NCBI GenBank assembly: GCA_023515725.1
Contig: JALDTO010000118.1
Location: forward strand, 1 to 14,923
Source of the DNA: Amoeboaphelidium protococcarum X5
Taxonomy: Eukaryota > Fungi > Aphelidiomycota
Reading direction: 5' to 3'
Length of the DNA: 14,923 bases
The notes beneath the pieces were generated by a model. The model did no database searches, was not told the origin of the DNA, and saw only the letters and a program-made list of their open reading frames with translations. Made by a program: the position numbers and the translations under genes. The stretch's first letter is position 1. The number at the start of each line of letters is the position of its first letter. Shown here piece by piece: positions 1 to 14,923 of the stretch.

Positions 1-215
1 TTGAAAGCTGTAGCTGATGAATTGGAAACTCGTCCTTTTGAGGTAATATTACTATTATTATCATTGTTAGTGCAATGTATTTATCGTAATACGTCATTTA
101 ATGAAGCGTGTGAGTGTAGCTGTACTTTCATAGAGATGCACTTAGCAAGTCGATGGAATAGGATCTGCAATCTGCTGGAATCGTTGGCGCAAGTTTACAA
201 GTGGATTTTTTGTGA
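1..215 (+). CDS. 3' end of a probable UBX-domain protein (Ubx5/UBXN7-like), join(<1..42,120..215)
   Basis: Splicing GT at 43 to AG at 119 with TAG=Gln gives LKAVADELETRPFE|LYFHRDALSKSMEQDLQSAGIVGASLQVDFL then TGA 213-215. This resembles the UBX C-terminal pattern FEL...(D/T)L/I..AG(L/I)...(L/I).V.F. The family call is from memory on only 45 aa. Confidence 0.6.
43..119 (+). other. Spliceosomal intron (77 nt, GT-AG, phase 0)
   Basis: GTAATA...GAGTGTAG, AT-rich. Removal joins two segments into a UBX-like C-terminus ending at TGA. Confidence 0.65.
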
Positions 216-425
216 TTAATTAAAATTGCGCATTTCTATCCTCTTTATTATAAAGTCTATTATTAAATTTCTTTACTATAAACTAGTTGCTTGTAAAGAC
301 ACTTTGTAGTCGTTCCCTTATTGATTGAAATATTGATCTTCCACTTCATAACATCAAACAATTGAAATTTCTTTCAATCTCCACAAAGTTACAATTTTAT
401 ACTAAAGTTCACTCGAATCTATAAA

Positions 426-3400
426 ATGCAGTCTATACTTTTAGTATCTGATAGACCAGTTAGAAGATTGGCTTTATTACCTAGATCTGTGCCAGGTAAA
501 GAGTCTTAGTATGCTCTGTTATTAGAAAATCTTGCTGCCCCTCAGTAATAATCTGGTAAATAATGCACAGCTAGATTTCAGTAGATCACTCAGCTTGATC
601 ATGCCAACTTTAAACAATTGTTAAATACTCCTATATATGGCACTCTTGGTCTCGTACAAGTAGATAAAGGTATGTATTATACTTATATTATGTATTATTA
701 TACATGTCAATCGCTGCTTGATTATTTGCATTCAGCATCCAAGTGTAGAACCATTTGTGTGTGTGATCACTGATCAAACTCTGGTCGGCAAGATGGAGGG
801 ATCGAGTATTTATCGCATCAATAATGTAATGTTCTTCTCGCTCACTAATCCTAGATATGATAATGTATCAGACAATGGATCAAGTTACTTGGTGAAGAAG
901 GAATTTAGTGGTGGCGGTAATGTTTAGTTTGGTCCTGATGGTCAACTGATTGAAGATTACGAATCTATACGCCATCCGTGTGCACATCTGTAAAAGTTTC
1001 TATCAACAGGCAGTTTCTATTACTCTTATGATTTTGATCTGACTAATAGTGCCCAGAATAGATAGTAGATTGAGAAGGGTATCAGCATATGGGAGACTGC
1101 TGATGATAGATTCTTCTGGAATGCCTATCTCATTGGGCAGTTGTTAAAATTTAGACGTTAATTGCCAGCAGAAGAATAATCAGCTCTGGACAGAGAAGGT
1201 CTTTTGGTTATGGCCATCAATGGATTCGTTCGAGTGGATTAAACGAATATTTATGGTGAAGCTGCGACCCTGGCTCTGATATCACGTTTATCTTGCCGTA
1301 GAAGTGGCACCAGATTCAATACTCGCGGCATCGATGACGATGGTAATGTGGCGAATAATGCCGAGACAGAGATGTTGATCTATGCCAAGAATCAGTGCTT
1401 CTCCTATCTTATTATAAGAGGTAGTGTGCCTGTATTTTGGGAATAATAGGGATTACAGTTGGGACAGCATAAGATTTAATTATCACGGAGTTTGGATGCA
1501 TCTCGACCTGCATTTGAGAAGCATTTCAAAGACATTTCAGATAGATATGGCCAGTGCCACGTGGTGAATCTCTTGGGGAGTATCAAAGAGAATAGTGCAG
1601 AGGTGGTGCTGTCTGATGCATTTAACTCTTAAATTAAGCTGGCTAATCTTGATCCGGTGGTATAGTGCACCAATTTTGATTTTCACGCTGTTACCAAGGG
1701 TGAAAAGTATGAAAATGTTGTTATGCTTCAGAGATTTATCCAGTAGTCTATGGATCAATTTGGTTACTTTCACTTTGATGGCACCGCTGGTGTGGTTAGA
1801 TAGTTTCAGAGTGGTGTATTTCGCGTCAACTGCCTGGATTGTCTGGATCGCACCAACGTTGTGGAAGGTTATTTGTGCAAGATTGTATCCAGTCGGTTCA
1901 CGCAATCTGTACTTAACTTGCACTCTGATACTTTATTCTCGCAATTCATGAATGATATATGGGCCGACAATGGAGATGAATTGTCAAAGATTTATACTGG
2001 CACTGGAGCTCTAAAGTCTGGATTCACTCGCACAGGTAAGCGCAGTATTATGGGTATGATGGATGACGCGCGAAAGACTGCTCAGAGGTTATATGTTAAC
2101 AACTTTTAGGATAAGTCAAAGCAAGAAGTTATTGACTTGCTGCTGGGTAAGTTGGCGAATCAGTTGGAAATCATATTGCATAATCCAATTTCAGAGGCTG
2201 TCAATGTTGCGTTAGAGAGTCGTATCACTGAATGGGCGTCCAAAACAAGTATATCTGTTCACGTTGCGACATGGAATGTGAATGGAAAATAGCCAACTGG
2301 GGAGAATATCTCTTCATGGCTCAAATTTGATAATTTGGCTGGCACAGTGCCTGATATGTTGGTGGTTGGCTTCCAGGAGATTGTTGAATTGAGTCCGTAG
2401 TAGATTATGGCCACCGATGTCAGCAAACGTCTGGTATGGGAAGAATTGTTGATCAAGACTTTAAACTCTGTATATCCAAATCAAAAATATGTTTTACTAA
2501 AGTCTGACTAGTTAGTAGGCGCGGCGCTAAGTGTATTTGTAAAGTCTTGCCACCTGCAGAATATTCGAAATGTTCATGGAGCTGTGAAAAAGACTGGTAT
2601 GGCGGGCCTGGCTGGTAATAAAGGAGGAATTGGGATCAGAATGGATTTCTATGACACAAGCTTGTGCTTTGTCTGCGCGCATCTAGCTGCTGGTCATTCA
2701 AATTATGCTGATAGGAACGCTGATTACAAGACTATAAATGATGGAATGGTGTTCAAGTAGGGATCTAAAATCCTGGACAATGAAGCTGTATTCTGGCTAG
2801 GTGACTTCAATTATAGAATCGATAGTGCCAATGATGAGGTGCGGGGCAGAATCAATAAGGGCGATCACTTATCACTGCTAGCTTTAGATCAGCTGGGAAT
2901 ACAAATGAGACTCGGTGGAGCATTCCAAGGCTTCTAGGAGGGAAAAATTACGTTCCCACCTACTTACAGATTCGATGTTGGAACTAACGATTATGACACT
3001 AGTGAGAAGGCTCGAATCCCTGCTTGGACTGATAGAGTTTTATTTAAAGGTTAGGGGGTGAAGTTGTTATCATACGGCAGAGCTGAACTCACTTCATCAG
3101 ATCATAAACCGGTAAAGGCCATGATGTAGGTCGAGTTGAAGATTGTGAACAAGTAGATTAAGGATTAGATTCAGATTGAACTAATGAAGTAGTACAATGA
3201 TGGCATATTGAAGGCTTCAGTAATTGCTGACACTGTGACCAAGTTGCAGTCTGCTGATGGCGGAATGGTCGCATAGAGAGGTGTCACGTAGCAATCAGTT
3301 TCAATGAACCTGATCGACATTGATGATGGTCCGTCTGCGCAACCACCTCCTAGACTTCCACCGCGGCCTGTTATGTCTAATGCCCAGTCTGCAAACTTTA

Positions 3401-3633
3401 ATTGGATGGACGGTGGAAATAGTGTAAATGATATGCAATTTGATTCATTTAAAAGTAAAGATCGTTTTGTTGTAGTTGATAGCAACAACAAGTCGCGTCA
3501 AATGGAGAATCCGTTTGCAGATCAGATTGATGTTTAGGCACGCACAGCCTCTACAAAACCACCCATTCCTCAGAGATAAACATAGATTATAGACAATCCT
3601 TTTGCTGATGAATATGCGGATCCTTGGAAATGA
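426..3633 (+). CDS. Synaptojanin-like polyphosphoinositide phosphatase (SAC1 + inositol 5-phosphatase domains; Inp52/Inp53/Syj1-like), join(426..669,749..3633), ~1042 aa
   Basis: With TAR=Gln: [52 protein letters not shown], intact SAC1 catalytic motif [12 protein letters not shown] (CLDCLDRT 1831-1854), then 5-phosphatase motifs [53 protein letters not shown] 426, ends TGA TGA at 3631-3636. Confidence 0.95.
670..748 (+). other. Spliceosomal intron (79 nt, GT-AG, phase 1)
   Basis: GTATGT donor at 670, AAGTGTAG acceptor ending 748. Removal reconciles the frame change and yields [18 protein letters not shown], typical of the synaptojanin N-terminus. Confidence 0.88.
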
Positions 3634-3822
3634 TGAATGTAGCTTATTGTGAAATTTTTGATTAGATGAACGTTGAATTTATAAATACTTTTTTATTGGC
3701 TGTTTTTAAGATGATCTTTCAGTTTCGACAAAGTAGTTTGTCACCTTTAAAGCTTTATTGTCTTCCTATAGAGATCTTCCTTTATTAAATATACATTTCA
3801 GAGTCTTTCTACCTCGGAAATT

Positions 3823-5199
3823 ATGAGCATTGTGTAGCGAAAGTAGAATAAAAATTAGTTAGATTACCCTGACCAGAAGGACGGTATAAGCAGGTCAACC
3901 TAAATAGTAAATGTGGATGCTTCACATTGGGACTGGCGATAATTTTGGTACATTTATTTGACTGTATTTGGATATTCTTTGGGTATTAATATGTTTATGC
4001 AATCGCTGCCGTTTCTGCTTAAAGACATTGGTGCATCTGAAGTTGAATACTCGTATGTAATGTCTGCAGGCTCTTTGGCTTCAATGTTGGGCTCGTTCGG
4101 CGCGGGTGTGTTTATCGATCGATTTGGATCCAAGATTACTTGTATTATCTCATATGTCGCTTGTATCGTTGGGTATCTGTCATCATTTAGTGCTTCCAGT
4201 CCATACATGTTGTATTTGAGCCGAGTGTCTGTTCTATTCTAACAAGCGGTAATAGCAAGTCGAACATTCGTGGCGATTGAAACTGAAAGTGACATTAACT
4301 CATTGTCTTATATTAGCGTGGCATATGGAATAGGCGCTGCATTGGGACCAATATTATCTGGGTACATCATAAGGTTCAACTCTGTTTAGACGGTCGGTAT
4401 GGCGTGTATTGGTGTTAATGTACTGTGTCTGTTGATAGTTACAGTGACAATGAACAGCGGCGATGGTGGCGATTTTAAAAATCGAAAACCAGCTGCGTCG
4501 CGACGAGTTTTGCGGCGCGTTTCAACTTCAAGCTTGTTTAAAACAATTGGCTTGCATGATATCATCGTGTTGTGTAGTATTGTGAGGTTGAGATCTCTTC
4601 TTGCCACTAAGGCCCTGATAACATTTGCTTCCTCTGCGCTGCATACTTAGCTCTCATACACTCTCATAAATTAGTATAACTTTGAATCTTAAAGCGTCGG
4701 TTTTGTATATACACTGCTCGGCTGTGTCATGGTAATTGTTTAATTAGCTGTAGGCCCTCTTCTAACAAGATTAGGTATAAAGCAGTCAACAGCCATGAAG
4801 CTGTCGACAATGTTCATATGTTCTGCATCGCTATTGTATTTTTTGGCTACATCATACATGTTGTACGTGCTGAGTGTTATGCTATTCACAGCGGGAGTTA
4901 CCGCGTTCGTCTCGCTGGGAAACTCTCTGCTTACGCGCGCAGTTAACGACAATCAGCGGTAGAAATCGAATGTCGCGGATGCTAAAGAACTTTAAGGCAC
5001 AATCATTGGACTTGACATGGGATGTGTTAATCTTGTCCGTGTTGTTGCCCCATTAATGATTGCCAGAGTCAATTATGCTGCAGTTATACCTTTACTATGT
5101 AGTGCATTGGCATCAATTTCTCTGTTGAATGAGTCTATACGATCTGAGTAGCGATAATAGATTTAAAATAATAACAATAGTTATGTTCGATTTGATTGA
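3823..5199 (+). CDS. Major facilitator superfamily transporter (DHA1/TetA/SLC22A18-like), ~458 aa
   Basis: Single frame ATG 3823 to TGA 5197-5199 with TAR=Gln. Repeated hydrophobic helices, MFS motif A-like GVFIDRFGSK, helix-4 Arg in LYLSR, motif C-like AYGIGAALGPILSG. Confidence 0.88.
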
Positions 5200-5295
5200 G
5201 TTTCAAAGAGGCGTTGCTCATTCTTAATGTAAATTTCGCACTGAAGAAAGAACTTGTCCTCGCTCTAACTTAGCTTCATCAAAACTACGTTTTAC

Positions 5296-5745
5296 GGCGC
5301 GAAAGTGATACGGACTATGAACTAGATAATTTCCTACAGACTGAAGGTTGTTGAAATAGTATATCTCGAAATCTGAAAGGGAGAAGAGCGTTAATTGGTA
5401 CGTTTAAAATTCATTCCTTTTAGTTCTTGATAGTAACACCTGTTCAACCAGCAAAGACTTTTGAGCGAACAAATGCCGGACATTATTCTCCTCAACAAAT
5501 TGGAGTATTAACAGACATTTAACACATGTACAGTGCTTCGCTACGTAAAGGCCAATGGTAACAACGCCGCCGCCATGATCATTCTCTGAGTCAAACACGC
5601 GTGTCGCTCAATGGAATTCTTTCCCTTCTTCATATTCCCCACACAAAATCAAAAGTGCGCCCTCTTTAACATCGCCGCTGCATTCATTCAGCAATAAATA
5701 TCTCGCTCTCTTTCTCTCGCTCCCTTCTCTCTCACTTACCTTTTT
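5296..5745 (+). promoter_or_regulatory. Probable promoter/5' leader region of the USP gene
   Basis: Within the longest intergenic spacer (5200-5836). Contains GGCGCGAAA (5296-5304), CCAAT (5552-5556), TGAGTCA (5587-5593), palindrome ACACGCGTGT (5595-5604) and a CT-rich tract (~5701-5745). Function is inferred only. Confidence 0.35.
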
Positions 5746-5836
5746 GTCAAAACTGAAATCCAGCCAGTACGACTTCAAACGAATATTCATTCTCATTCTA
5801 TCTTATCATCATCAACACGTTAGATTGGTATAACAA

Positions 5837-8800
5837 ATGGATTTGGAGTCTCTATTTTCGTTTTCTGAGGATACCAACATTCCGGGTGACGATGTTATAA
5901 TTATGGAAGATGTACAAGATGATAATGGTTACGAGTAATTGATTGAGCCTGGATTTGCAGAATCTGTAAACTTGGAAAAGTTGTAAATGTTGGTGTAATG
6001 GATGTCCGGTGTTCCGTATAATGTGTCTTCAAACATACTATTGGAAGAGTCTATCGTTGAGAATACCATTCATCCTGACGATATTTATCTGCAGTTTATC
6101 AACACTGAGCTACTTAAAGTTATCGATATCGTGCTCAATAATGAACGTGTTCCGGTACGGATTGCAAAGAAGTTCATGTTCTCTCTCTGTCGTTTGTACG
6201 TATTTTACTTGAGTTATGCAGATGCGCTGGTGGATTTTTATGAACTTGTCAGGAATGTTATAGCGGATAATAACAGTTACAGCTTGTTTTAACGCCGCTC
6301 TGACTTGCATGATGAGTTGACCGCGTATTACATGCAGGAAGTCAATCTTATGTAAGAAGTCATGCACGTTATGGAAGTGGGATGTGTATCGCCAGAGTCT
6401 CTCTTTGTCATTCTTGATCCATATATTACTGTGATGAATGGGTACAAGGATGTGGATAGTGACCTATTGTAGCTATTTCGATGTCTTTGCTCTGCGGATC
6501 AGTTTCTCAAAGGATCAAGGCAGAGTATTGTTGCTCTGGTTAAAGTCTTTTTAGGTACTGATATTGCTCAGAATCGACAGTTTAATGTTCTGCTGTTTAG
6601 TCTTGGCTATGATCTATTTATCAAAGTGTAACAGTTGGAGAAGAAACTACTAGGATTGAGCATTATCTCAGAGAGTGTGCAAACTTTATTAAAGTTGTAA
6701 TAGTAAAGCTCTGATGGGGTATTAATGGATGAGCAGTTGAATTCGAATGTGGATTTCTAGGACTTATTGTCATAATTACTCAGCAGATAGGAGTTTATCA
6801 GTAGATCTTTGCCTATTGTACGGTGGATGATTAGTAATGAGTTATTCGATCGTGGTTGTATCGAGAAAGTGATCAATGTAGTAAGTAGTCCTCAGTAGCA
6901 TGATTCTTTGAGACAGGTAGTTACTGACTTAGTTGTGGATATTATTCAAGAATTTGGTGCTGCGGGAAATCAATCTATGATTCAGTCTATTAGAGATTTA
7001 GTATTTGTGATCGATAGCACCTTGCTGGAGAAGCGAATATTTAGCGTTTATGCCACTTTGATTTAGTGCTTCAACGCCATGTAAATGGATGAAGATGTCA
7101 GAATATGCTTACAAAAGCTCTGGTCGTTCTGTTGTGGAATGAAGTAGTAGTCGGACTCTGCTGTATCCCATGCCGCCTCTCCAATTAATCATTACCCATC
7201 ACAATTATAATCTCAGAATCTGTGGGCAGGAGCTTTTGAGATACTAAGCAAAGTTTGTAGCAGAAATGCAGATTATGCTAGATTTGAATAGTATTGCCTG
7301 GATCTCGCTTGGAATTCTTTTATTGAAGATCCAAGTCACTTGTACTTTTGTGTGGTATTATTCTAGTGCCTGTTGGATTCTGATAGATAGCTGGTTCGTC
7401 TTTTAATTGATCGTGGCTTAATTTCCAAGTTGGAAGATTCTTTTATCGGTTATCATATGCAAGTTCGCAGCAGAGTTAAGGATATGATCGATTCGTCTCC
7501 CAATCCATAGAGTTATGCGAATTTCAATTGGCTCGATTCTGTCCTAGTGGGTCATGTACAAGTTGGTTCTGTTGTAGAGAGCGTGCTGCGATTCTATCTA
7601 TTTCTAAAAGTCAATCTGTAGTAGCCGAATCTTGATATCGAACTGGTATCTAAGCCGTATGTTGAAAGATTGTGGTCTGAATTTGTGGTGAACGGTGTTT
7701 GTGAACAAGAGCAAGTCATGGTTATTCAAGGAATGTGTGGTATTCTGGACTCGCAGCTGATGTCTCTTGTTCTGTCTCAACTATTGCCTCGATTAAAGTA
7801 TCATGATTTGACTTTAAATCTATATCATTCGATCGAGAATATGTTCTTAATGCTCAACGCAAGAAATTCAAGTGTTACTGATGATACTGAGCAGAATAGT
7901 GATCAAAGTCGTCGCAAGATCAAGGTTTAGAATTTCAATAATATTGTGTAGTTGGACACATTGTGGGCCTTGTACTGGGGCATTGGAGACAATCACGTAG
8001 TCTCTGCCTGTTTAAATACTTTGGTTTAGATCTACTAAGGGAATAAGGATACTGCTTCTCTATTTGTTACGAATTGTATGAACCGTGTTGGTCCTGAGAT
8101 TGAAGATTCGCGGCATCTTGGCAGAGCGCTGTTTGCACTGCAGTAGTTTATGTAATAGGAACTGGATAATCGTAAATCCAATTTACCTTAGAAGAGAGGT
8201 ATTTCTAACGTTAATGGTGAAAGCACTGGCTGGAAGTCTCCTTTGATTTCTACGCCTTCTCTTAGTAATGGGTGGTCTTTGTAAGGATAAGGTAATACAC
8301 GTGAAAGTTCTATGCAATCAATGATATTGTACATATAGTTGTTTGGGAGTGGACCTGGTGATAGAAGAAAGATTTAGCTTGGTTCATAAGATACTGTATC
8401 TAGATTGAGATTTCTTATATCTCAAGAGTTTGGTATGTAGCCTGAGGAGGTTAGAATCTTGGCTGTTGGTAAATCTCTTGATAACGATGATTAAACTTTG
8501 GGTGATTGTCATATCGTGGATTAGATGGTTATTCAAGTTATCAAGAGAATGTAGACAGCTATATCTGTGTAGAAGAGCGACGTTAAATAGCTTGATTAGT
8601 CCATGTATTCATTGTCTGATCTCTTTGATGGTGATGCTTTTTAGCGCTTGTTTTCATTGTTAGACTCTTCGGATAATGAGGTGTAGTCTCTGGCCTGGCA
8701 GTTGATCAAGATGCTCCCACCCAGCTCTTCACATTAAAAAGCGGTCCGTAATGCCCTCTCTGATCCTAGCGAATTCTTGCAGCTGTTTTAGACTAGTTCT

Positions 8801-11800
8801 GGGTATGGTTTGCTTTATGATTTGCAGATTTTGTACGATGATTTAAGGAAACAGGATAATGTCTCGGTTATTGCTCCACTTCTTAAGCAGCATGGGGATT
8901 AGATTCTGGAGACTCTCATCGTATAGATTACTTTAATTTTGCAAACGTTGTTATCTGCTCCTCAGGATTCTGTGAGACTTGGTTAGATCGATGTACTTTT
9001 AAACATTGTTGATATTATATGCAGAAAGGTCGATATAGCACCGAAAATGACGAAATCGCAAGTGGATACTTTCATATAATTCTCTGTTAAATCTATGTAA
9101 GATTGGTAGAGTTGTCCTCTGGATTTATCATACGGTTTGATGATTGTTGTACTCAAAGACTAAAGTGCATTGGTAGACTCTCTTGATAGTTTGCCCAAGT
9201 ATTTAGCAAGTCTGTTGGTGTTGATGGTTGGCAGCGAGTATGGAGGATCGACATTATTGGGCCTTGACTATTCCAGGCATAACGACATTAGAGGATTCAA
9301 CAAAAAATGCTTTGACCACATTGAAGAGTAATTATCTCATTTTGATAAGAATTTTTAGGTTTAGCTAGTCTTTAAGATGGTGAAGTAGTTATCATTGTTG
9401 CATAATTATTGCTATGATTGTAAGCTGTACTTTGAGCTTATGAAAGATCTCTTAAAGTCTATTGATTCCGCGATTTCTGGTAGTGAAGATGCTGTGAATC
9501 TTTTAACGTTGCTCTGCGTACAGCTCTTTGCTCGCAGTGTGTCGAAAGAGTATTATGATCAAAATACTTCACTGGTTGACCATTTCACGGTGGGATTGGT
9601 GGAAGGAATACAGCTGGTGTTCCAGTTACAACAGCATGAAGATTCTTAATTCATTCCCGACTTCCATCAAAGATTTAATTTGATAAAGCTGATGTTTGAC
9701 TACCTGTTTGATATTCCCACATTGCTCAATAGAGGCAAATTCGGACCTCCTGTGGCAAAGTCTATGATATTGCGATAGTCATGTTATGACTTGATCAGAG
9801 TAGTGTCTTAGTAATCTTGGGACCAATTTGTTCAAGTAGTGAAGCTAGTTTAAGAGTAATAAGAAATCGTGTATTGCGGTAAGGGATTGTTTGAGTATAG
9901 TCCGGGAGATGGCTCTAAATCTGTGACTGGACGCGTTGGATTAAAGAATCTTGGAGCCACGTGCTACATGAACTCTCTTTTGCAGTAGTTTTATATGATT
10001 TAGCCATTCAGAAATTAGCTGCTCTCCATTCGCAAGTACGAAGAGTCTAAGGATGAAGATTTCATATTTCAGCTGTAGAATCTATTTGTTCATTTGATGG
10101 AGAGTGAGCGGCGAGCGTATAACACATTATCATTCACAAAGACATGTCGCGATATCGAAGGCAATAAAATGAATGTGTACTAGCAGATGGATGTCGATGA
10201 GTTTTATAATGTTTTCCTGGATAAAGTTGAAGGAATTGTCAAGGACACTGATCAGTAGGACATTGTGAAGACGGTCTTTGGTGGGCAGCTTCTACAGCAG
10301 ATAAAGTCTCGAGATTGTGAGCATGTATCCGAGCGCCGCGAGGCCTATTATTCGATCTAGTGTGAGGTGAAGAATCAGCAATCTTTGGTTGACAGTCTGC
10401 ACAATTTTATTAAGGAGGAGGTGTTGGACGGCGATAACAAGTATTTCTGTGGTCAGTGCTAGACCCATGTATCTGCCACTAAGCGTATATGTGTTCAAGA
10501 TCTGCCGCCTGTGCTGGTGTTCAGTCTAAAGAGATTTGATTTCGATTTCGAAACTATGCGCAGATTGAAGATTTATGATCGGTTTGAATTTCCATCAATG
10601 ATCAATATGAAAGAGTATACTGCGGACTTTATCAATTAAGATGGTGCTTTGGGAAGTGAGGATATGGTCAGCGATGCTCCGAGTAATGTCATTTCTCCTG
10701 CATCTACTGCATCGGTTGGCTCTGATGGCATCTGGTACAAGCTGAGAGGCGTTCTCGTTCATACGGGCACTGCTGATTCTGGACACTATTACTCATACAT
10801 CCGGGAAGATTAGAGGATTGCAGGTGCTTCTCAGTCTTAAAATTAGTCTGAGAATGAGAAGTGGTTACTTTTTAATGACTCTCTGGTTGAGCCGTTTGAC
10901 GTGAATAATATACCAGAGGAATGTTTTGGTGGTCACGTTAACAACAGCGATCGAATGAAGAATTACAGTGCCTACATGTTGTTCTATGACCGCGTGGAGG
11001 ATGGTGGTAATCCATCTATGCATGTTGAGATGGAAAAGAGTCAATCATAATCGAAGGCACCTTAAGAGTTAGTGCAGTCCGTCTGGGAAGAGAATTTTTA
11101 GCATTACAAAGATCGGAATTACTATGATACCAACTATTACAGTCTAATTGAGTACATTATTTAGCAAATGTTGGATGGCGGCAAGTTCAAAGATACTGCA
11201 GATCCCAATATCAATGTGAATTCAGAGCTGTTTAAAGTTGGTCAGATTGCCTTTCGATATCTGGTTAATGTGCTAGTACATAGTAAAGACTTTTACAAGT
11301 GCAAGTAAATAGCGCGATCTATCATGTCTTTGGTCGAGAAGAATGCTGATTTGAGCAGATGGATCCTGTAGCAGTTCATCGTGTAGAATGATATGTTTGT
11401 TGATATGACTCTGTAATGTTATTTAGTCGACGTTAGAAGCTGTATAACTCAATTGATATTGTGCAGCATTAAAACTATAAGGTCTGGCGCTTTAGAGAGT
11501 CGAATTAGAAATAATGTCTTAGAAGAAGTGGGTGGTGACACTGAGGATTGTTATGGATTTTCTCTGCTCAGTCTCGGATCTCCTGCTCAAGTCAAAGTGT
11601 CCAGATCTGTTACTGATGATCGTTAGGAAGCCATCAATGTTGGACCTCTTATGTTCCGCTTTATGGAGCAAATACACGATCTGATGGTGGACAGTCGAAT
11701 TAGAAAGCATTGGAAGTACTTTAACGAATTCTGGGAACTCTTGGTCTCTATTGCCCAGCTAGGCCGTGAAGAAAGTATGTACATGCTACATCGCGGATTT

Positions 11801-13597
11801 CATTCTATCGCTTTAGAGTTGTGTGATGATCCTTATGGAACTGCAGGTGGTGGTCTGAAGATGAAGGACAAGGTTGATGACGTTAATTTGTAACATGTCC
11901 AGCTGCTGATGTGCATTCTGGTCAAGTTTGCACTGGGTGATGAATAAGCCTTTACATTGATATTCCCTGAGCAGATTCAGGTGATATTGGCGGTTGACTA
12001 TCAGACTGCTTACTGTGATCTGAAGTCTTTAGTAGGTAGAACTTTGACAGAGCTTACTGTAGATCTGATTTGTCTAGATCAGAATTACCTGGATTATGGC
12101 TGCAAGAATCAACTATAGATATTATGCTCTGGAGGTCAGAATACATCGGATGAGAGTTATTTTATACTGAGCGGCGTATGTGATCGCCTTTCTGATATTG
12201 CGCCGACGATTACATGGCAAGTGTACAATTTGTGGAAGCGTTTATAACCCAATGATTATAAGTAGTGGGCAGAATTTATTCATTCAATGGCTGTCAAGTT
12301 CGAACATGTTCGCGAGCACTTGGTTCAGGATTACCTGTAAGCGTTGATGTCCAATCTTCTATGCACCAGGCATGATTAAATTAGGTACTTGACTTGCAGA
12401 TTGATTGACATTGCTGTTATCCAACCTGCGCTTGATTATTAGAATAATATTGACGATAGTACTTTGGACAATACGTAGTCTCGATTAAAGTTGATTGATT
12501 TTGTGCATAATCTCAAGGCGTAATTTCCGGAGCTGTAGTAAATTCTACACAGTATGCAGCAACGTGGTATTAAAGACCATATTGGGACTTTATTTGAGTA
12601 TTACTTTTAGTGTCTATCACAATGTCTTGTCAGTGCTGACATTTATACAGTCGTAAAAGATGTCTTGCTTTAGGCGGCTCTGAATATTTAGGACATTTTC
12701 TAGGTACTCGGTTCTATCATGGATAGAAGTAGAAGTCTTATCGTGCAGATGCTCATCAAAGGATTTGAGTATGACAGTAATCTTATCGCAGAGCTGAGTA
12801 ACAATCCTCTTATCATGGACAACTTTGTGGAGTTTGGCATTTTGATAGACTGTGATAGTAGCAAATGTACAAAGAACGTCAACGAGACCTTTCCACCGCT
12901 CACTACTCTATGGCTGATGCTTGTTAGACGTGATGGAACATTCGTCTCTAAACTTCTAAAAGGTAGCTCCTTGCCGTGGTCTTTGCGAATTATCATGATG
13001 GAAGAGTCTCAGCATCACAAAGTCGCCGCACATTCTCTGGTGAACTTTGTACGTGATTGTAATAATCCAGAGTTGACGCGGTTCTGTTAAAGTCTATTCT
13101 TTGTCGACTAGCTGTGGTAGAAGATTAATGTTGTAGCATTATATCTTGAATAGTATTCCGTTCTGATGTCTGATCAAGTTGCTTCGATGGTTCCATTGCA
13201 GGTGCTGCATAAAGCTGTGGAATGTCTGTCCCTTCTTGGTCGACAGTAGATGAGTGAAAGTAATATGAGAATATTCAGATAGATTATTGGAGCATTGCGC
13301 AGTCATTTGCAAAGTATATTGAATGCTCTCGAGAGAAGGTAAGATCTCGCTGGTGATCGTGGAATGTTGGATAATATCATTCTAAAATTGGGAACTATAA
13401 TCAATCATTGTCTTGCTGCACCAGAATATGAGGCGATGAATGCTGATTTGAGTGCACTGCATCAGAACTATTTATTAAGAATCTAGGCTATCCTGCTCGA
13501 GCAACGGCATTGTTCACCTACTCACACTATCGTTATAGATGATGATGACAACTTCGAAGATGATCAAGACAATGTGAGTGGCATAGAATAACATTGA
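5837..13597 (+). CDS. Large ubiquitin carboxyl-terminal hydrolase, peptidase C19 (USP34/USP24/USP9-like), ~2586 aa, no intron needed
   Basis: One frame, no TGA found from ATG 5837 to TGA 13595-13597. Cys box VGLKNLGATCYMNSLLQQFYM (Cys 9962-9964), QLQNLFVHLMESERRAYN, QQMDVDEF, LKRFDFD, His box YKLRGVLVHTGTADSGHYYSYIR (His 10784-10786), WLLFND, ECFGG, SAYMLFY. Ubiquitin-like domain at ~8321-8548, long helical flanks, DUF3517-like RKHWKYFNEFWELL. Confidence 0.94.
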
Positions 13598-13681
13598 AGA
13601 GTGTTTAAAATAGCAAACAAAAATCTATCAAATAGTCATACCGTACATGCAATGAGCAAATAATATATTCAATACCTTTAT

Positions 13682-14653
13682 TCATTATACATCTCCTTTT
13701 TAGAACTTGATAGCATTTTCAATGGTCATTTATCGCGCATCATCATAACTAATATTCTTCTCCTGTGCAATCACATTCAGAATATCCTTCATCGCATCAA
13801 TTAAACCACTATCAACACTTCCCAAATCAGTCTCAGCCAGTAATCTATCTGATGGAGTACGACGAATACAATCCTACAGCCTCTGCATAGATCTACCGCA
13901 TATAGTGCTTGAATATGAAAAGTAAAATCTCGCACCAACACCCATAGGCAATTGACAAAACTTCTCTATAAATTACGGTGGACCCATATAAGAATGGAGC
14001 ATAATACGCGGTGGAAGTTTAATCTCTTGCTGAAGAGTCTCTGGAAGCATAGCCTCTTCCTTTCTATACTGTCTCACAAGAGATCTCTTTGATGGCACTT
14101 TAGACTTGAAATAGGCCAGCATCTCCTCGTGTGATTAGACAGAATGCAGCGATACTGGGCGATTAAGTTTCCAAGCTAGATGGATTTACTAATCGAATAT
14201 TACCTGCTATATCGACTTGAATGTACTTTACTCCACCCCGGGATGTATCTTCATTAAGTGACTAGGTGTTTTGGCTATTTTGTCCAGTCCAAACTCTCCT
14301 ACCACAGCGTTGGGATACTTTAATAACATCTACTCCAGCTATTGAAACCAGTTATCTCTCACCACACTTTAATCTTTAAAATCCTGCGATTCTTATTACT
14401 ACGACTTTAGTGATTCTAACTTATCATTCTTATGATTAAACTGCAACTAGAAGGCAAACCAAGGATGATATCCAAAGCAAGGTACGACTTGATCCGAGTT
14501 TTATAGATAAATTCTCTCTACAATGGACCAGTCTGAAGGCTGAGTTCCCATCACCATCATTCTATATCCAGTATTAGCCGTAAGGAACTGATTGATTTAT
14601 TTCACGGTAACATCAACATCCTGGCGAGAGATGTCATCACAACTGCTGTCATG
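13682..14653 (-). CDS. TatD-family metal-dependent DNase (fungal Scn1/TATDN3-like), 5' end missing or unresolved, possibly disrupted
   Basis: Minus-strand frame with TAR=Gln: VMGTQPSDW, VVPCFGYHPW (GYHPW 14459-14473), AVVGEFGLD (GEFGLD 14282-14299), QQVIFDQQIHLA, RPVSLHSVQSH, PPRIMLHSYMG, RFYFSYS, DRLLAETD (ETD 13826-13834), ENAIKF, stop TGA 13684-13682. No DxHxH upstream. In-frame ATGs only at 14560 (internal) and 14791 (beyond the repeat cluster). Absent from the supplied ORF track. Confidence 0.88.
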
Positions 14654-14675
14654 GCCAATTTTTAAAGGGGAAAGT

Positions 14676-14770
14676 TATTCGGCCCGATCGGGCTCGCTTA
14701 TTTGGCCCAATCCTATTCGGCCCAACAGTGAAACAACAGACAATGGTTATTCGGCCCTTTTATTCAGCAC
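14676..14770. repeat. Cluster of five 10-bp direct repeats, consensus TATTCGGCCC, plus a 12-bp palindrome
   Basis: TATTCGGCCC 14676-14685, TATTTGGCCC 14699-14708, TATTCGGCCC 14714-14723, TATTCGGCCC 14748-14757, degenerate TATTCAGCAC 14761-14770. Perfect palindrome GCCCGATCGGGC at 14682-14693. Confidence 0.9.
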
Positions 14771-14803
14771 CAAAAAACAATATTTATTCATACACTCTCG
14801 ATA

Positions 14804-14923
14804 TCACTTAGATTAGGACTTTTGCTTCTTATTTCTTAATTTTTCAGCTGCGGCTGCATATCTCGTCTTTTTCCGTACGTTATTGCGTGGCCTACCTTTG
14901 CAAGGCTGACTGCCATCTGGTAG
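14804..14923 (-). CDS. C-terminal fragment of an unidentified protein, possibly a transposase tail
   Basis: LPDGSQPCKGRPRNNVRKKTRYAAAAEKLRNKKQKSQSK then TGA 14806-14804, with an AT-hook-like GRPR and an NLS-like basic tail. The frame is ambiguous: a second minus frame stays open to TGA 14790-14788. Confidence 0.4.

What the first reader, a model, noticed from the sequence alone, without database searches (positions are those of the whole stretch)
1..14923. Non-standard nuclear genetic code: TAA and TAG encode Gln, TGA is the only stop
Seen: every gene, on both strands, has in-frame TAA and/or TAG with no frameshifts and ends at TGA. TAR falls on family-conserved Gln positions. Synaptojanin: HL[TAA 991]K, FWE[TAA 1444], NNF[TAG 2107]D, LSP[TAG TAG 2398-2403]IM, SD[TAG 2509]LVG. 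USP Cys box: SLLQ[TAG 9986]. TatD: [TAG 14209]xxxFxx[TAA 14188] and HSV[TAA 14137]. Both codons map to Gln, not to different residues. Established: this is table 6, known from ciliates, diplomonads, some ulvophytes and the aphelid Amoeboaphelidium protococcarum. It implies tRNA-Gln(UUA/CUA) and a UGA-specific eRF1 encoded elsewhere.
Basis: partly seen in the sequence, partly recalled or inferred. Interest (0 to 1): 0.9.

Follow-up and report, generated by a model that had tools for sequence, protein, structure and literature searches.

The report
Known aphelid stop-to-glutamine genetic code
This DNA is from the algal parasite Amoeboaphelidium protococcarum, a relative of fungi, which reads the usual stop codons TAA and TAG as glutamine; the feature is real but has been published for this species since 2013.

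Summary
All ten cited codons are in frame, and four long genes appear only if TGA alone stops. TAA and TAG both come out as Gln by three routes: homologue columns, swaps with CAA/CAG among three copies of the locus (28 of 41 changed columns, none with TGA), and eRF1's GGQ written GG-TAG in one copy and GG-CAG in the other. The genome holds tRNA genes with CUA and UUA anticodons, closest to tRNA-Gln(UUG), and an eRF1 with altered stop-recognition motifs. A spliced RNA contig keeps the T, so it is not editing. The table-6 translation of the synaptojanin gene is identical to KAI3639961.1 of Amoeboaphelidium protococcarum, on a contig of exactly this window's length. The code is published for this species (Karpov 2013, as cited in PMC5304391 and PMC6299283), and the scan noted it before on other DNA of this genome. 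'TGA is the only stop' is supported for most genes but not proven for all: the MFS tail after TAA 5155 diverges like non-coding DNA, though counter-examples exist. Verdict: already known, low interest.

The parts
1..215 (+). 3' end of a UBX-domain gene; last exon read in the frame starting at 132, TAG (Gln) at 159-161, TGA at 213-215; intron limits not determined
   Evidence: annotated UBX orthologues lie directly upstream of synaptojanin in L075-L078; the standard-code orthologue in L078 ends VDYL-stop in register with VDFL-TGA
426..669 (+). Synaptojanin-like phosphoinositide phosphatase, exon 1
670..748 (+). GT..AG intron, 79 nt
   Evidence: Joint in the contig of run coded X8; the spliced model equals KAI3639961.1
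749..3633 (+). Synaptojanin-like gene, exon 2; whole protein 1042 aa with 11 TAA and 25 TAG read as Gln; ends at TGA 3631-3633
   Evidence: Pfam Syja_N and Exo_endo_phos2; 100% identical to MIR68_002002 / KAI3639961.1 under table 6
3823..5199 (+). MFS transporter, 458 aa to TGA, 8 TAA and 9 TAG; the tail 5158-5196 after TAA 5155 is poorly constrained
   Evidence: Pfam MFS_1; 27% identical to the A. occidentale orthologue, E 4e-44; tail comparison
5837..13597 (+). Large ubiquitin-specific protease, 2586 aa, single frame, 43 TAA and 70 TAG; ends TAA-CAT-TGA
   Evidence: Pfam UCH on stop-free pieces; same length as the annotated orthologues in L075 and L076
13682..14803 (-). TatD-family nuclease frame (TGA to TGA; start not determined; Pfam match 13703-14578); ends TAA-TGA
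   Evidence: PF01026, 94 bits, with 7 TAG and 9 TAA inside; TAG 14209 column 100% Gln, TAA 14188 column 96% Gln

Best explanation
The window is a contig of the aphelid Amoeboaphelidium protococcarum, whose nuclear code is NCBI table 6. UAA and UAG are decoded as glutamine by two dedicated tRNAs (anticodons UUA and CUA) derived from tRNA-Gln, while an eRF1 with a changed stop-recognition domain terminates at UGA. Shown: TAR codons behave as synonyms of CAR; the tRNA genes exist; the mRNA keeps the codons unedited; eRF1 motifs are changed; most genes end at TGA. Inferred: the tRNAs are charged with Gln by GlnRS; the eRF1 changes weaken UAA/UAG recognition; no gene ends at UAA.
For: Likelihood decoding against 150 homologues returns the standard meaning for the 60 sense codons present and Gln for TAA (margin 10.0 log units) and TAG (11.6). 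28 of 41 changed TAR columns among three copies of the locus stay within TAA/TAG/CAA/CAG (P 4e-10 against a uniform null, 0.002 against a transition-weighted null), none swaps with TGA. eRF1 GGQ is GGT-GGT-TAG in L003 and GGT-GGT-CAG in L004. tRNA(CUA) x2 and tRNA(UUA) x2; their closest tRNA among 24 other types is Gln-UUG (score 50 versus 44 or less). eRF1 versus human: T58A, S60V, R68K, L69Q, L126Q; GTS, E55, NIKS, S33, S70 kept; S33 and S70 are needed for UGA and L69A raises UAG readthrough (PMC4381064). Spliced RNA contig keeps T at TAG 3166 and shows only 21 T>C changes over a stretch with more than 36 TAR codons. Protein identity with KAI3639961.1.
Against: No peptide or ribosome data. 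Identity with the NCBI protein fixes the organism but is circular for the code, since the depositors evidently used table 6. tRNA-Gln identity rests on sequence likeness only, and both suppressors have a U1.C72 mismatch. The MFS tail after TAA 5155 diverges like non-coding DNA, and TatD and USP have TAA within two codons of TGA.
Confidence: 0.97

Rival explanations
1. UAA has a double meaning: Gln inside genes, but also a terminator close to the mRNA 3' end in a minority of genes, as in Condylostoma or Blastocrithidia. This modifies the best explanation rather than replacing it.
For: MFS codons 5158-5196 after TAA 5155 differ by 10% plus a frameshifting 1-nt indel from a haplotype whose gene body differs by 0.2%, and by 6 non-synonymous and 0 synonymous changes from the other. 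TatD ends TAA-TGA and USP TAA-CAT-TGA. TAA is enriched in the last three codons of 36 gene ends: 5/108 versus 42/3060, P 0.02. Earlier scan notes raise the same idea (unchecked).
Against: CAA shows a similar terminal excess (4/108; P 0.10). Peroxiredoxin copies end CAA-TGA and TAA-TGA, so the terminal TAA swaps with a Gln codon (L027/L028). An HEEL-TGA retention signal has TAA only five codons before the stop in one copy (L032). All three MFS copies still reach an in-frame TGA within 15 codons, and the USP tail is also rich in non-synonymous change, so loose tails are normal here. No TAA/TGA swap was seen at any gene end.
Confidence: 0.25
2. TAA/TAG are corrected to CAA/CAG in the mRNA by U-to-C editing, and the code is standard.
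For: None found.
Against: The spliced contig of run X8 keeps T at TAG 3166, shows TAG>TAA at 1665, and has 21 T>C differences in all, in line with its other transitions (C>T 18, A>G 17, G>A 15) and fewer than the 36 TAR codons of synaptojanin alone. Cognate tRNA genes exist.
Confidence: 0.005
3. The genes are pseudogenes or the stops are sequencing errors.
For: None beyond the presence of stop triplets.
Against: 184 TAR and no internal TGA or frameshift in four genes; the same codons in an independent assembly; 335 synonymous versus 172 non-synonymous changes between the two other copies; essential genes such as eRF1 also carry them; the gene is transcribed and spliced.
Confidence: 0.003
4. 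TAA and TAG encode different amino acids, or another residue (Glu, Tyr, Leu, pyrrolysine).
For: ARAGORN labels the CUA tRNA 'Pyl' and the UUA tRNA 'Stop' by anticodon alone.
Against: Each codon decodes separately to Gln; TAA and TAG swap with each other (9 columns) and each with CAA/CAG; the two tRNAs differ at about five positions and both lie closest to tRNA-Gln.
Confidence: 0.01

Closest known systems
Amoeboaphelidium protococcarum UAR=Gln nuclear code (Karpov et al. 2013, Protist 164:195, PMID 23058793, as cited in PMC5304391, PMC6299283, PMC11687900)
   Same: Same species and same code; the window's synaptojanin is NCBI protein KAI3639961.1 (MIR68_002002).
   Different: Nothing in the code itself. 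In the papers I could read I found no description of its suppressor tRNAs or eRF1, but the original report and the 2022 genome paper were not available to me.
NCBI translation table 6 in ciliates, Ulvophyceae, Hexamita and Streblomastix (PMC11687900)
   Same: UAA and UAG both Gln, UGA stop, coupled reassignment.
   Different: Independent origin inside Holomycota: A. occidentale genes in L077 and an aphelid-like metagenome contig (L078) end at TAA, TAG and TGA, and Paraphelidium uses the standard code (PMC6299283).
Context-dependent stop/sense codes of Condylostoma (PMC4967479) and Blastocrithidia (PMC12153298)
   Same: Internal UAR read as sense; a possible terminal role of UAA is not excluded here.
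   Different: Here UGA is never internal and ends most genes exactly at family C-termini; a terminal role for UAA is only hinted.

Membership tests
Table 6 (UAR=Gln) nuclear code | In-frame TAA and TAG in conserved, expressed genes | tested here: met
   184 in four genes; in all 16 Pfam matches genome-wide; spliced transcript
Table 6 (UAR=Gln) nuclear code | Both codons align to Gln and behave as synonyms of CAA/CAG | tested here: met
Table 6 (UAR=Gln) nuclear code | tRNA genes with CUA and UUA anticodons related to tRNA-Gln | tested here: met
   G000 C158:362956 and C200:31431 (CUA); C158:383536 and C200:16432 (UUA)
Table 6 (UAR=Gln) nuclear code | TGA is never a sense codon | tested here: met
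   No internal TGA in any gene or Pfam match; no TGA/TAR exchange
Table 6 (UAR=Gln) nuclear code | TGA is the sole terminator | tested here: inconclusive
   Several of 36 gene ends have TGA directly after a C-terminus shared with standard-code orthologues or a terminal signal; the MFS tail and TAA-near-TGA ends leave room for exceptions
Table 6 (UAR=Gln) nuclear code | eRF1 recognises UGA only | tested here: inconclusive
   Motif changes T58A, S60V, L69Q, L126Q with S33/S70 kept; specificity needs an assay
Table 6 (UAR=Gln) nuclear code | Gln in the peptide at TAA/TAG positions; tRNAs charged with Gln | not testable with these tools
   Needs mass spectrometry and charging assays
Amoeboaphelidium protococcarum | Sequence identity with deposited proteins of the species | tested here: met
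Context-dependent (dual-meaning) stop codes | The same codon is sense internally and terminates near the mRNA 3' end | tested here: inconclusive
   One suggestive tail, two counter-examples, terminal TAA excess paralleled by CAA
Context-dependent (dual-meaning) stop codes | Ribosome termination at UAA next to the poly(A) site | not testable with these tools
   Only assembled contigs were available; they cannot show ends

The most novel reading that the evidence does not exclude
In A. protococcarum UAA is read as Gln internally but also terminates a minority of genes near the mRNA end (candidate here: MFS at TAA 5155 or 5164), which would be a context-dependent stop codon in an opisthokont, alongside a dedicated UGA stop.
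Probability: 0.25. Interest if true: 0.65.

Novelty: already known. Interest (0 to 1): 0.1.

Why it matters
As a finding it adds nothing new: the code is published for this species and the deposited annotation already reads through TAA/TAG. In practice every ORF from this genome must be read with table 6. The pieces located here (two suppressor tRNA types, the eRF1 changes, standard-code aphelid relatives with the same gene order) make the species a convenient fungal-side model for how a stop-to-Gln change arises, and they allow a direct test of whether UAA keeps a residual stop role. That last point is the only part that would surprise a specialist.

Tried and rejected
No tRNA gene in the window. 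The SSU rRNA family search failed; 5.8S was found but was not needed. The first Pfam call was a coordinate slip and was re-sent with stop-free pieces. The TatD homologue search did not return A. protococcarum proteins, so the TatD end could not be compared across strains. MFE folding of the tRNAs was uninformative (z about -1). Repeats in the window are chance-level. Rejected: editing, pseudogenes or errors, different meanings for TAA and TAG, pyrrolysine.
Full report
Observation. The window has no standard-code ORF of 150 codons, but four long frames appear when only TGA is treated as a stop: +337-3633, +3715-5199, +5579-13597 and -14803-13682. The longest TGA-free frame is 2672 codons, against a maximum of 715 in 200 shuffles; treating only TAA or only TAG as stop gives 648 and 503. 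The genes are a synaptojanin-like phosphatase, an MFS transporter, a 2586-aa ubiquitin protease and a TatD-family nuclease, plus the 3' end of a UBX gene closing at TGA 213-215. Together the four carry 184 TAA/TAG and 146 CAA/CAG codons. The pattern is genome-wide: all 16 matches to eRF1/Dom34, SacI and TatD families have TAA/TAG inside and no TGA.

Meaning of the codons. I aligned the spliced synaptojanin, with X at TAA/TAG, to 150 homologues and inferred each codon's amino acid by likelihood. The 60 sense codons present gave their standard meaning; TAA and TAG each gave Gln, with margins of 10.0 and 11.6 log units. A larger set gave 15.4 and 24.5, but it includes two table-6 proteins of the same species, so one search is the cleaner figure. 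Columns 1444, 2401 and 2509 are 91-96% Gln; TatD 14209 and 14188 are 100% and 96% Gln. An independent test comes from the two orthologous loci of the other public assembly (L075, L076). Of 41 codon columns where a TAA/TAG differs among the three copies, 28 stay within TAA/TAG/CAA/CAG and none involves TGA (P 4e-10 uniform null, 0.002 transition-weighted null). In the genome's two eRF1 copies the catalytic GGQ motif is GGT-GGT-TAG in one and GGT-GGT-CAG in the other.

Not editing, not decay. One public run (coded X8, kind not on record) skips the 79-nt GT..AG intron 670-748 and covers genes but not the spacer, so I take it as RNA. Its contig keeps T at TAG 3166, where another DNA sample has CAG, and shows TAG>TAA at 1665. 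It has 21 T>C differences in all, similar to its other transitions and fewer than the 36 TAR codons in synaptojanin alone. Between the two other copies synonymous changes outnumber non-synonymous ones 335 to 172.

Machinery. Among 63 scored tRNA matches there are two genes with anticodon CUA and two with UUA. The two types differ at about five positions and are closest to tRNA-Gln(UUG) among 24 other tRNA types. Both have a U1.C72 mismatch where tRNA-Gln(UUG) has G1-C72. eRF1 domain 1 keeps GTS, E55, NIKS, S33 and S70 but has T58A, S60V, R68K, L69Q and L126Q relative to human. S33 and S70 are needed for UGA recognition and L69A raises readthrough most at UAG (PMC4381064), so the pattern fits a UGA-biased factor. 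This is inference; Gln charging and eRF1 specificity were not testable.

Source organism. A homologue search returned hypothetical protein MIR68_002002 (KAI3639961.1) of Amoeboaphelidium protococcarum, 1042 aa, on a contig of 14923 bases. My table-6 translation equals it at every residue. That fixes the organism; it is not independent evidence for the code. The 23.6-Mb genome with paired gene copies fits the genome-wide duplication described for the species (PMC10608142). Relatives with the same gene neighbourhood use the standard code: A. occidentale genes and an aphelid-like metagenome contig end at TAA, TAG and TGA, and Paraphelidium is standard (PMC6299283).

What is known. PMC5304391, PMC6299283 and PMC11687900 all cite Karpov et al. 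2013 for UAR = Gln in A. protococcarum. It is one of at least 13 independent coupled UAR reassignments (PMC5304391). The scan has noted the same code on many other pieces of this genome, and one earlier follow-up reached the same identification.

Is TGA the only stop? Earlier notes suggested UAA may also terminate, so I tested this on the DNA at hand. Among 36 distinct gene ends, several have TGA directly after a C-terminus shared with a standard-code orthologue (PGM, UBX) or after a terminal signal (HEEL). For a double meaning: the 13 MFS codons after TAA 5155 differ by 10% and a 1-nt frameshift from a haplotype whose gene body differs by 0.2%, and by six non-synonymous changes and no synonymous one from the other; TatD ends TAA-TGA and USP TAA-CAT-TGA; TAA is about threefold enriched in the last three codons (P 0.02). 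Against: CAA is enriched almost as much; peroxiredoxin copies end CAA-TGA and TAA-TGA; HEEL-TGA has a TAA five codons upstream in one copy; every MFS copy still meets an in-frame TGA; the USP tail is also loosely constrained. I leave a minority stop role for UAA at about 0.25.

Method note. The spliced model was built only inside local scripts.

Verdict. Real, correctly interpreted, already known for this very species. Interest 0.1.

Noticed in passing
window 5149-5199: MFS tail after TAA 5155 diverges like non-coding DNA, with a 1-nt frameshifting indel at 5180 in another haplotype; possible stop at TAA or a loose tail picked up after reassignment.
   Followed up: partly
L059:101-172, L060, L067:101-173, L068: Both suppressor tRNA types have a U1.C72 mismatch; either tolerated by GlnRS or repaired by 5' editing. 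The CUA and UUA genes lie about 15-20 kb apart on each of two paired contigs (C158, C200).
   Followed up: no
L003:1489-2004, L004: eRF1 domain 1 changes T58A, S60V, R68K, L69Q, L126Q; the eRF1 reading frames use TAG freely but show very few TAA.
   Followed up: partly
window 1-14923: No second copy of this contig was found in its own assembly, although many other genes are paired and the other assembly has two copies; one of them is 99.8% identical over synaptojanin but 97.6% over USP, hinting at collapse or mosaic haplotypes.
   Followed up: partly
window 5250-5369: A spacer segment between MFS and USP matches four other places in the genome at 73-84% (C135, C264); the 60 nt after the MFS TGA are also more conserved than the tail before it.
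   Followed up: no
window 14680-14760: Several copies of a short TCGGCCC-type motif in the GC-richer stretch upstream of the TatD conserved region; possibly promoter elements.
   Followed up: no
window 5690-5750: CT-rich tract upstream of the USP start, with several small indels between strains.
   Followed up: no
L078 (ENA ERZ19026233 scaffold_75): A metagenome contig with the aphelid gene order (anoctamin, PGM, WH1, UBX, synaptojanin, prenyltransferase, TatD) that uses the standard code; probably an unnamed aphelid.
   Followed up: partly
L035:1-3153: The rDNA assembly has a 5.8S-ITS2-partial LSU stretch followed by the SSU end and a second identical 5.8S 1545 nt away; probably an assembly join.
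   Followed up: no
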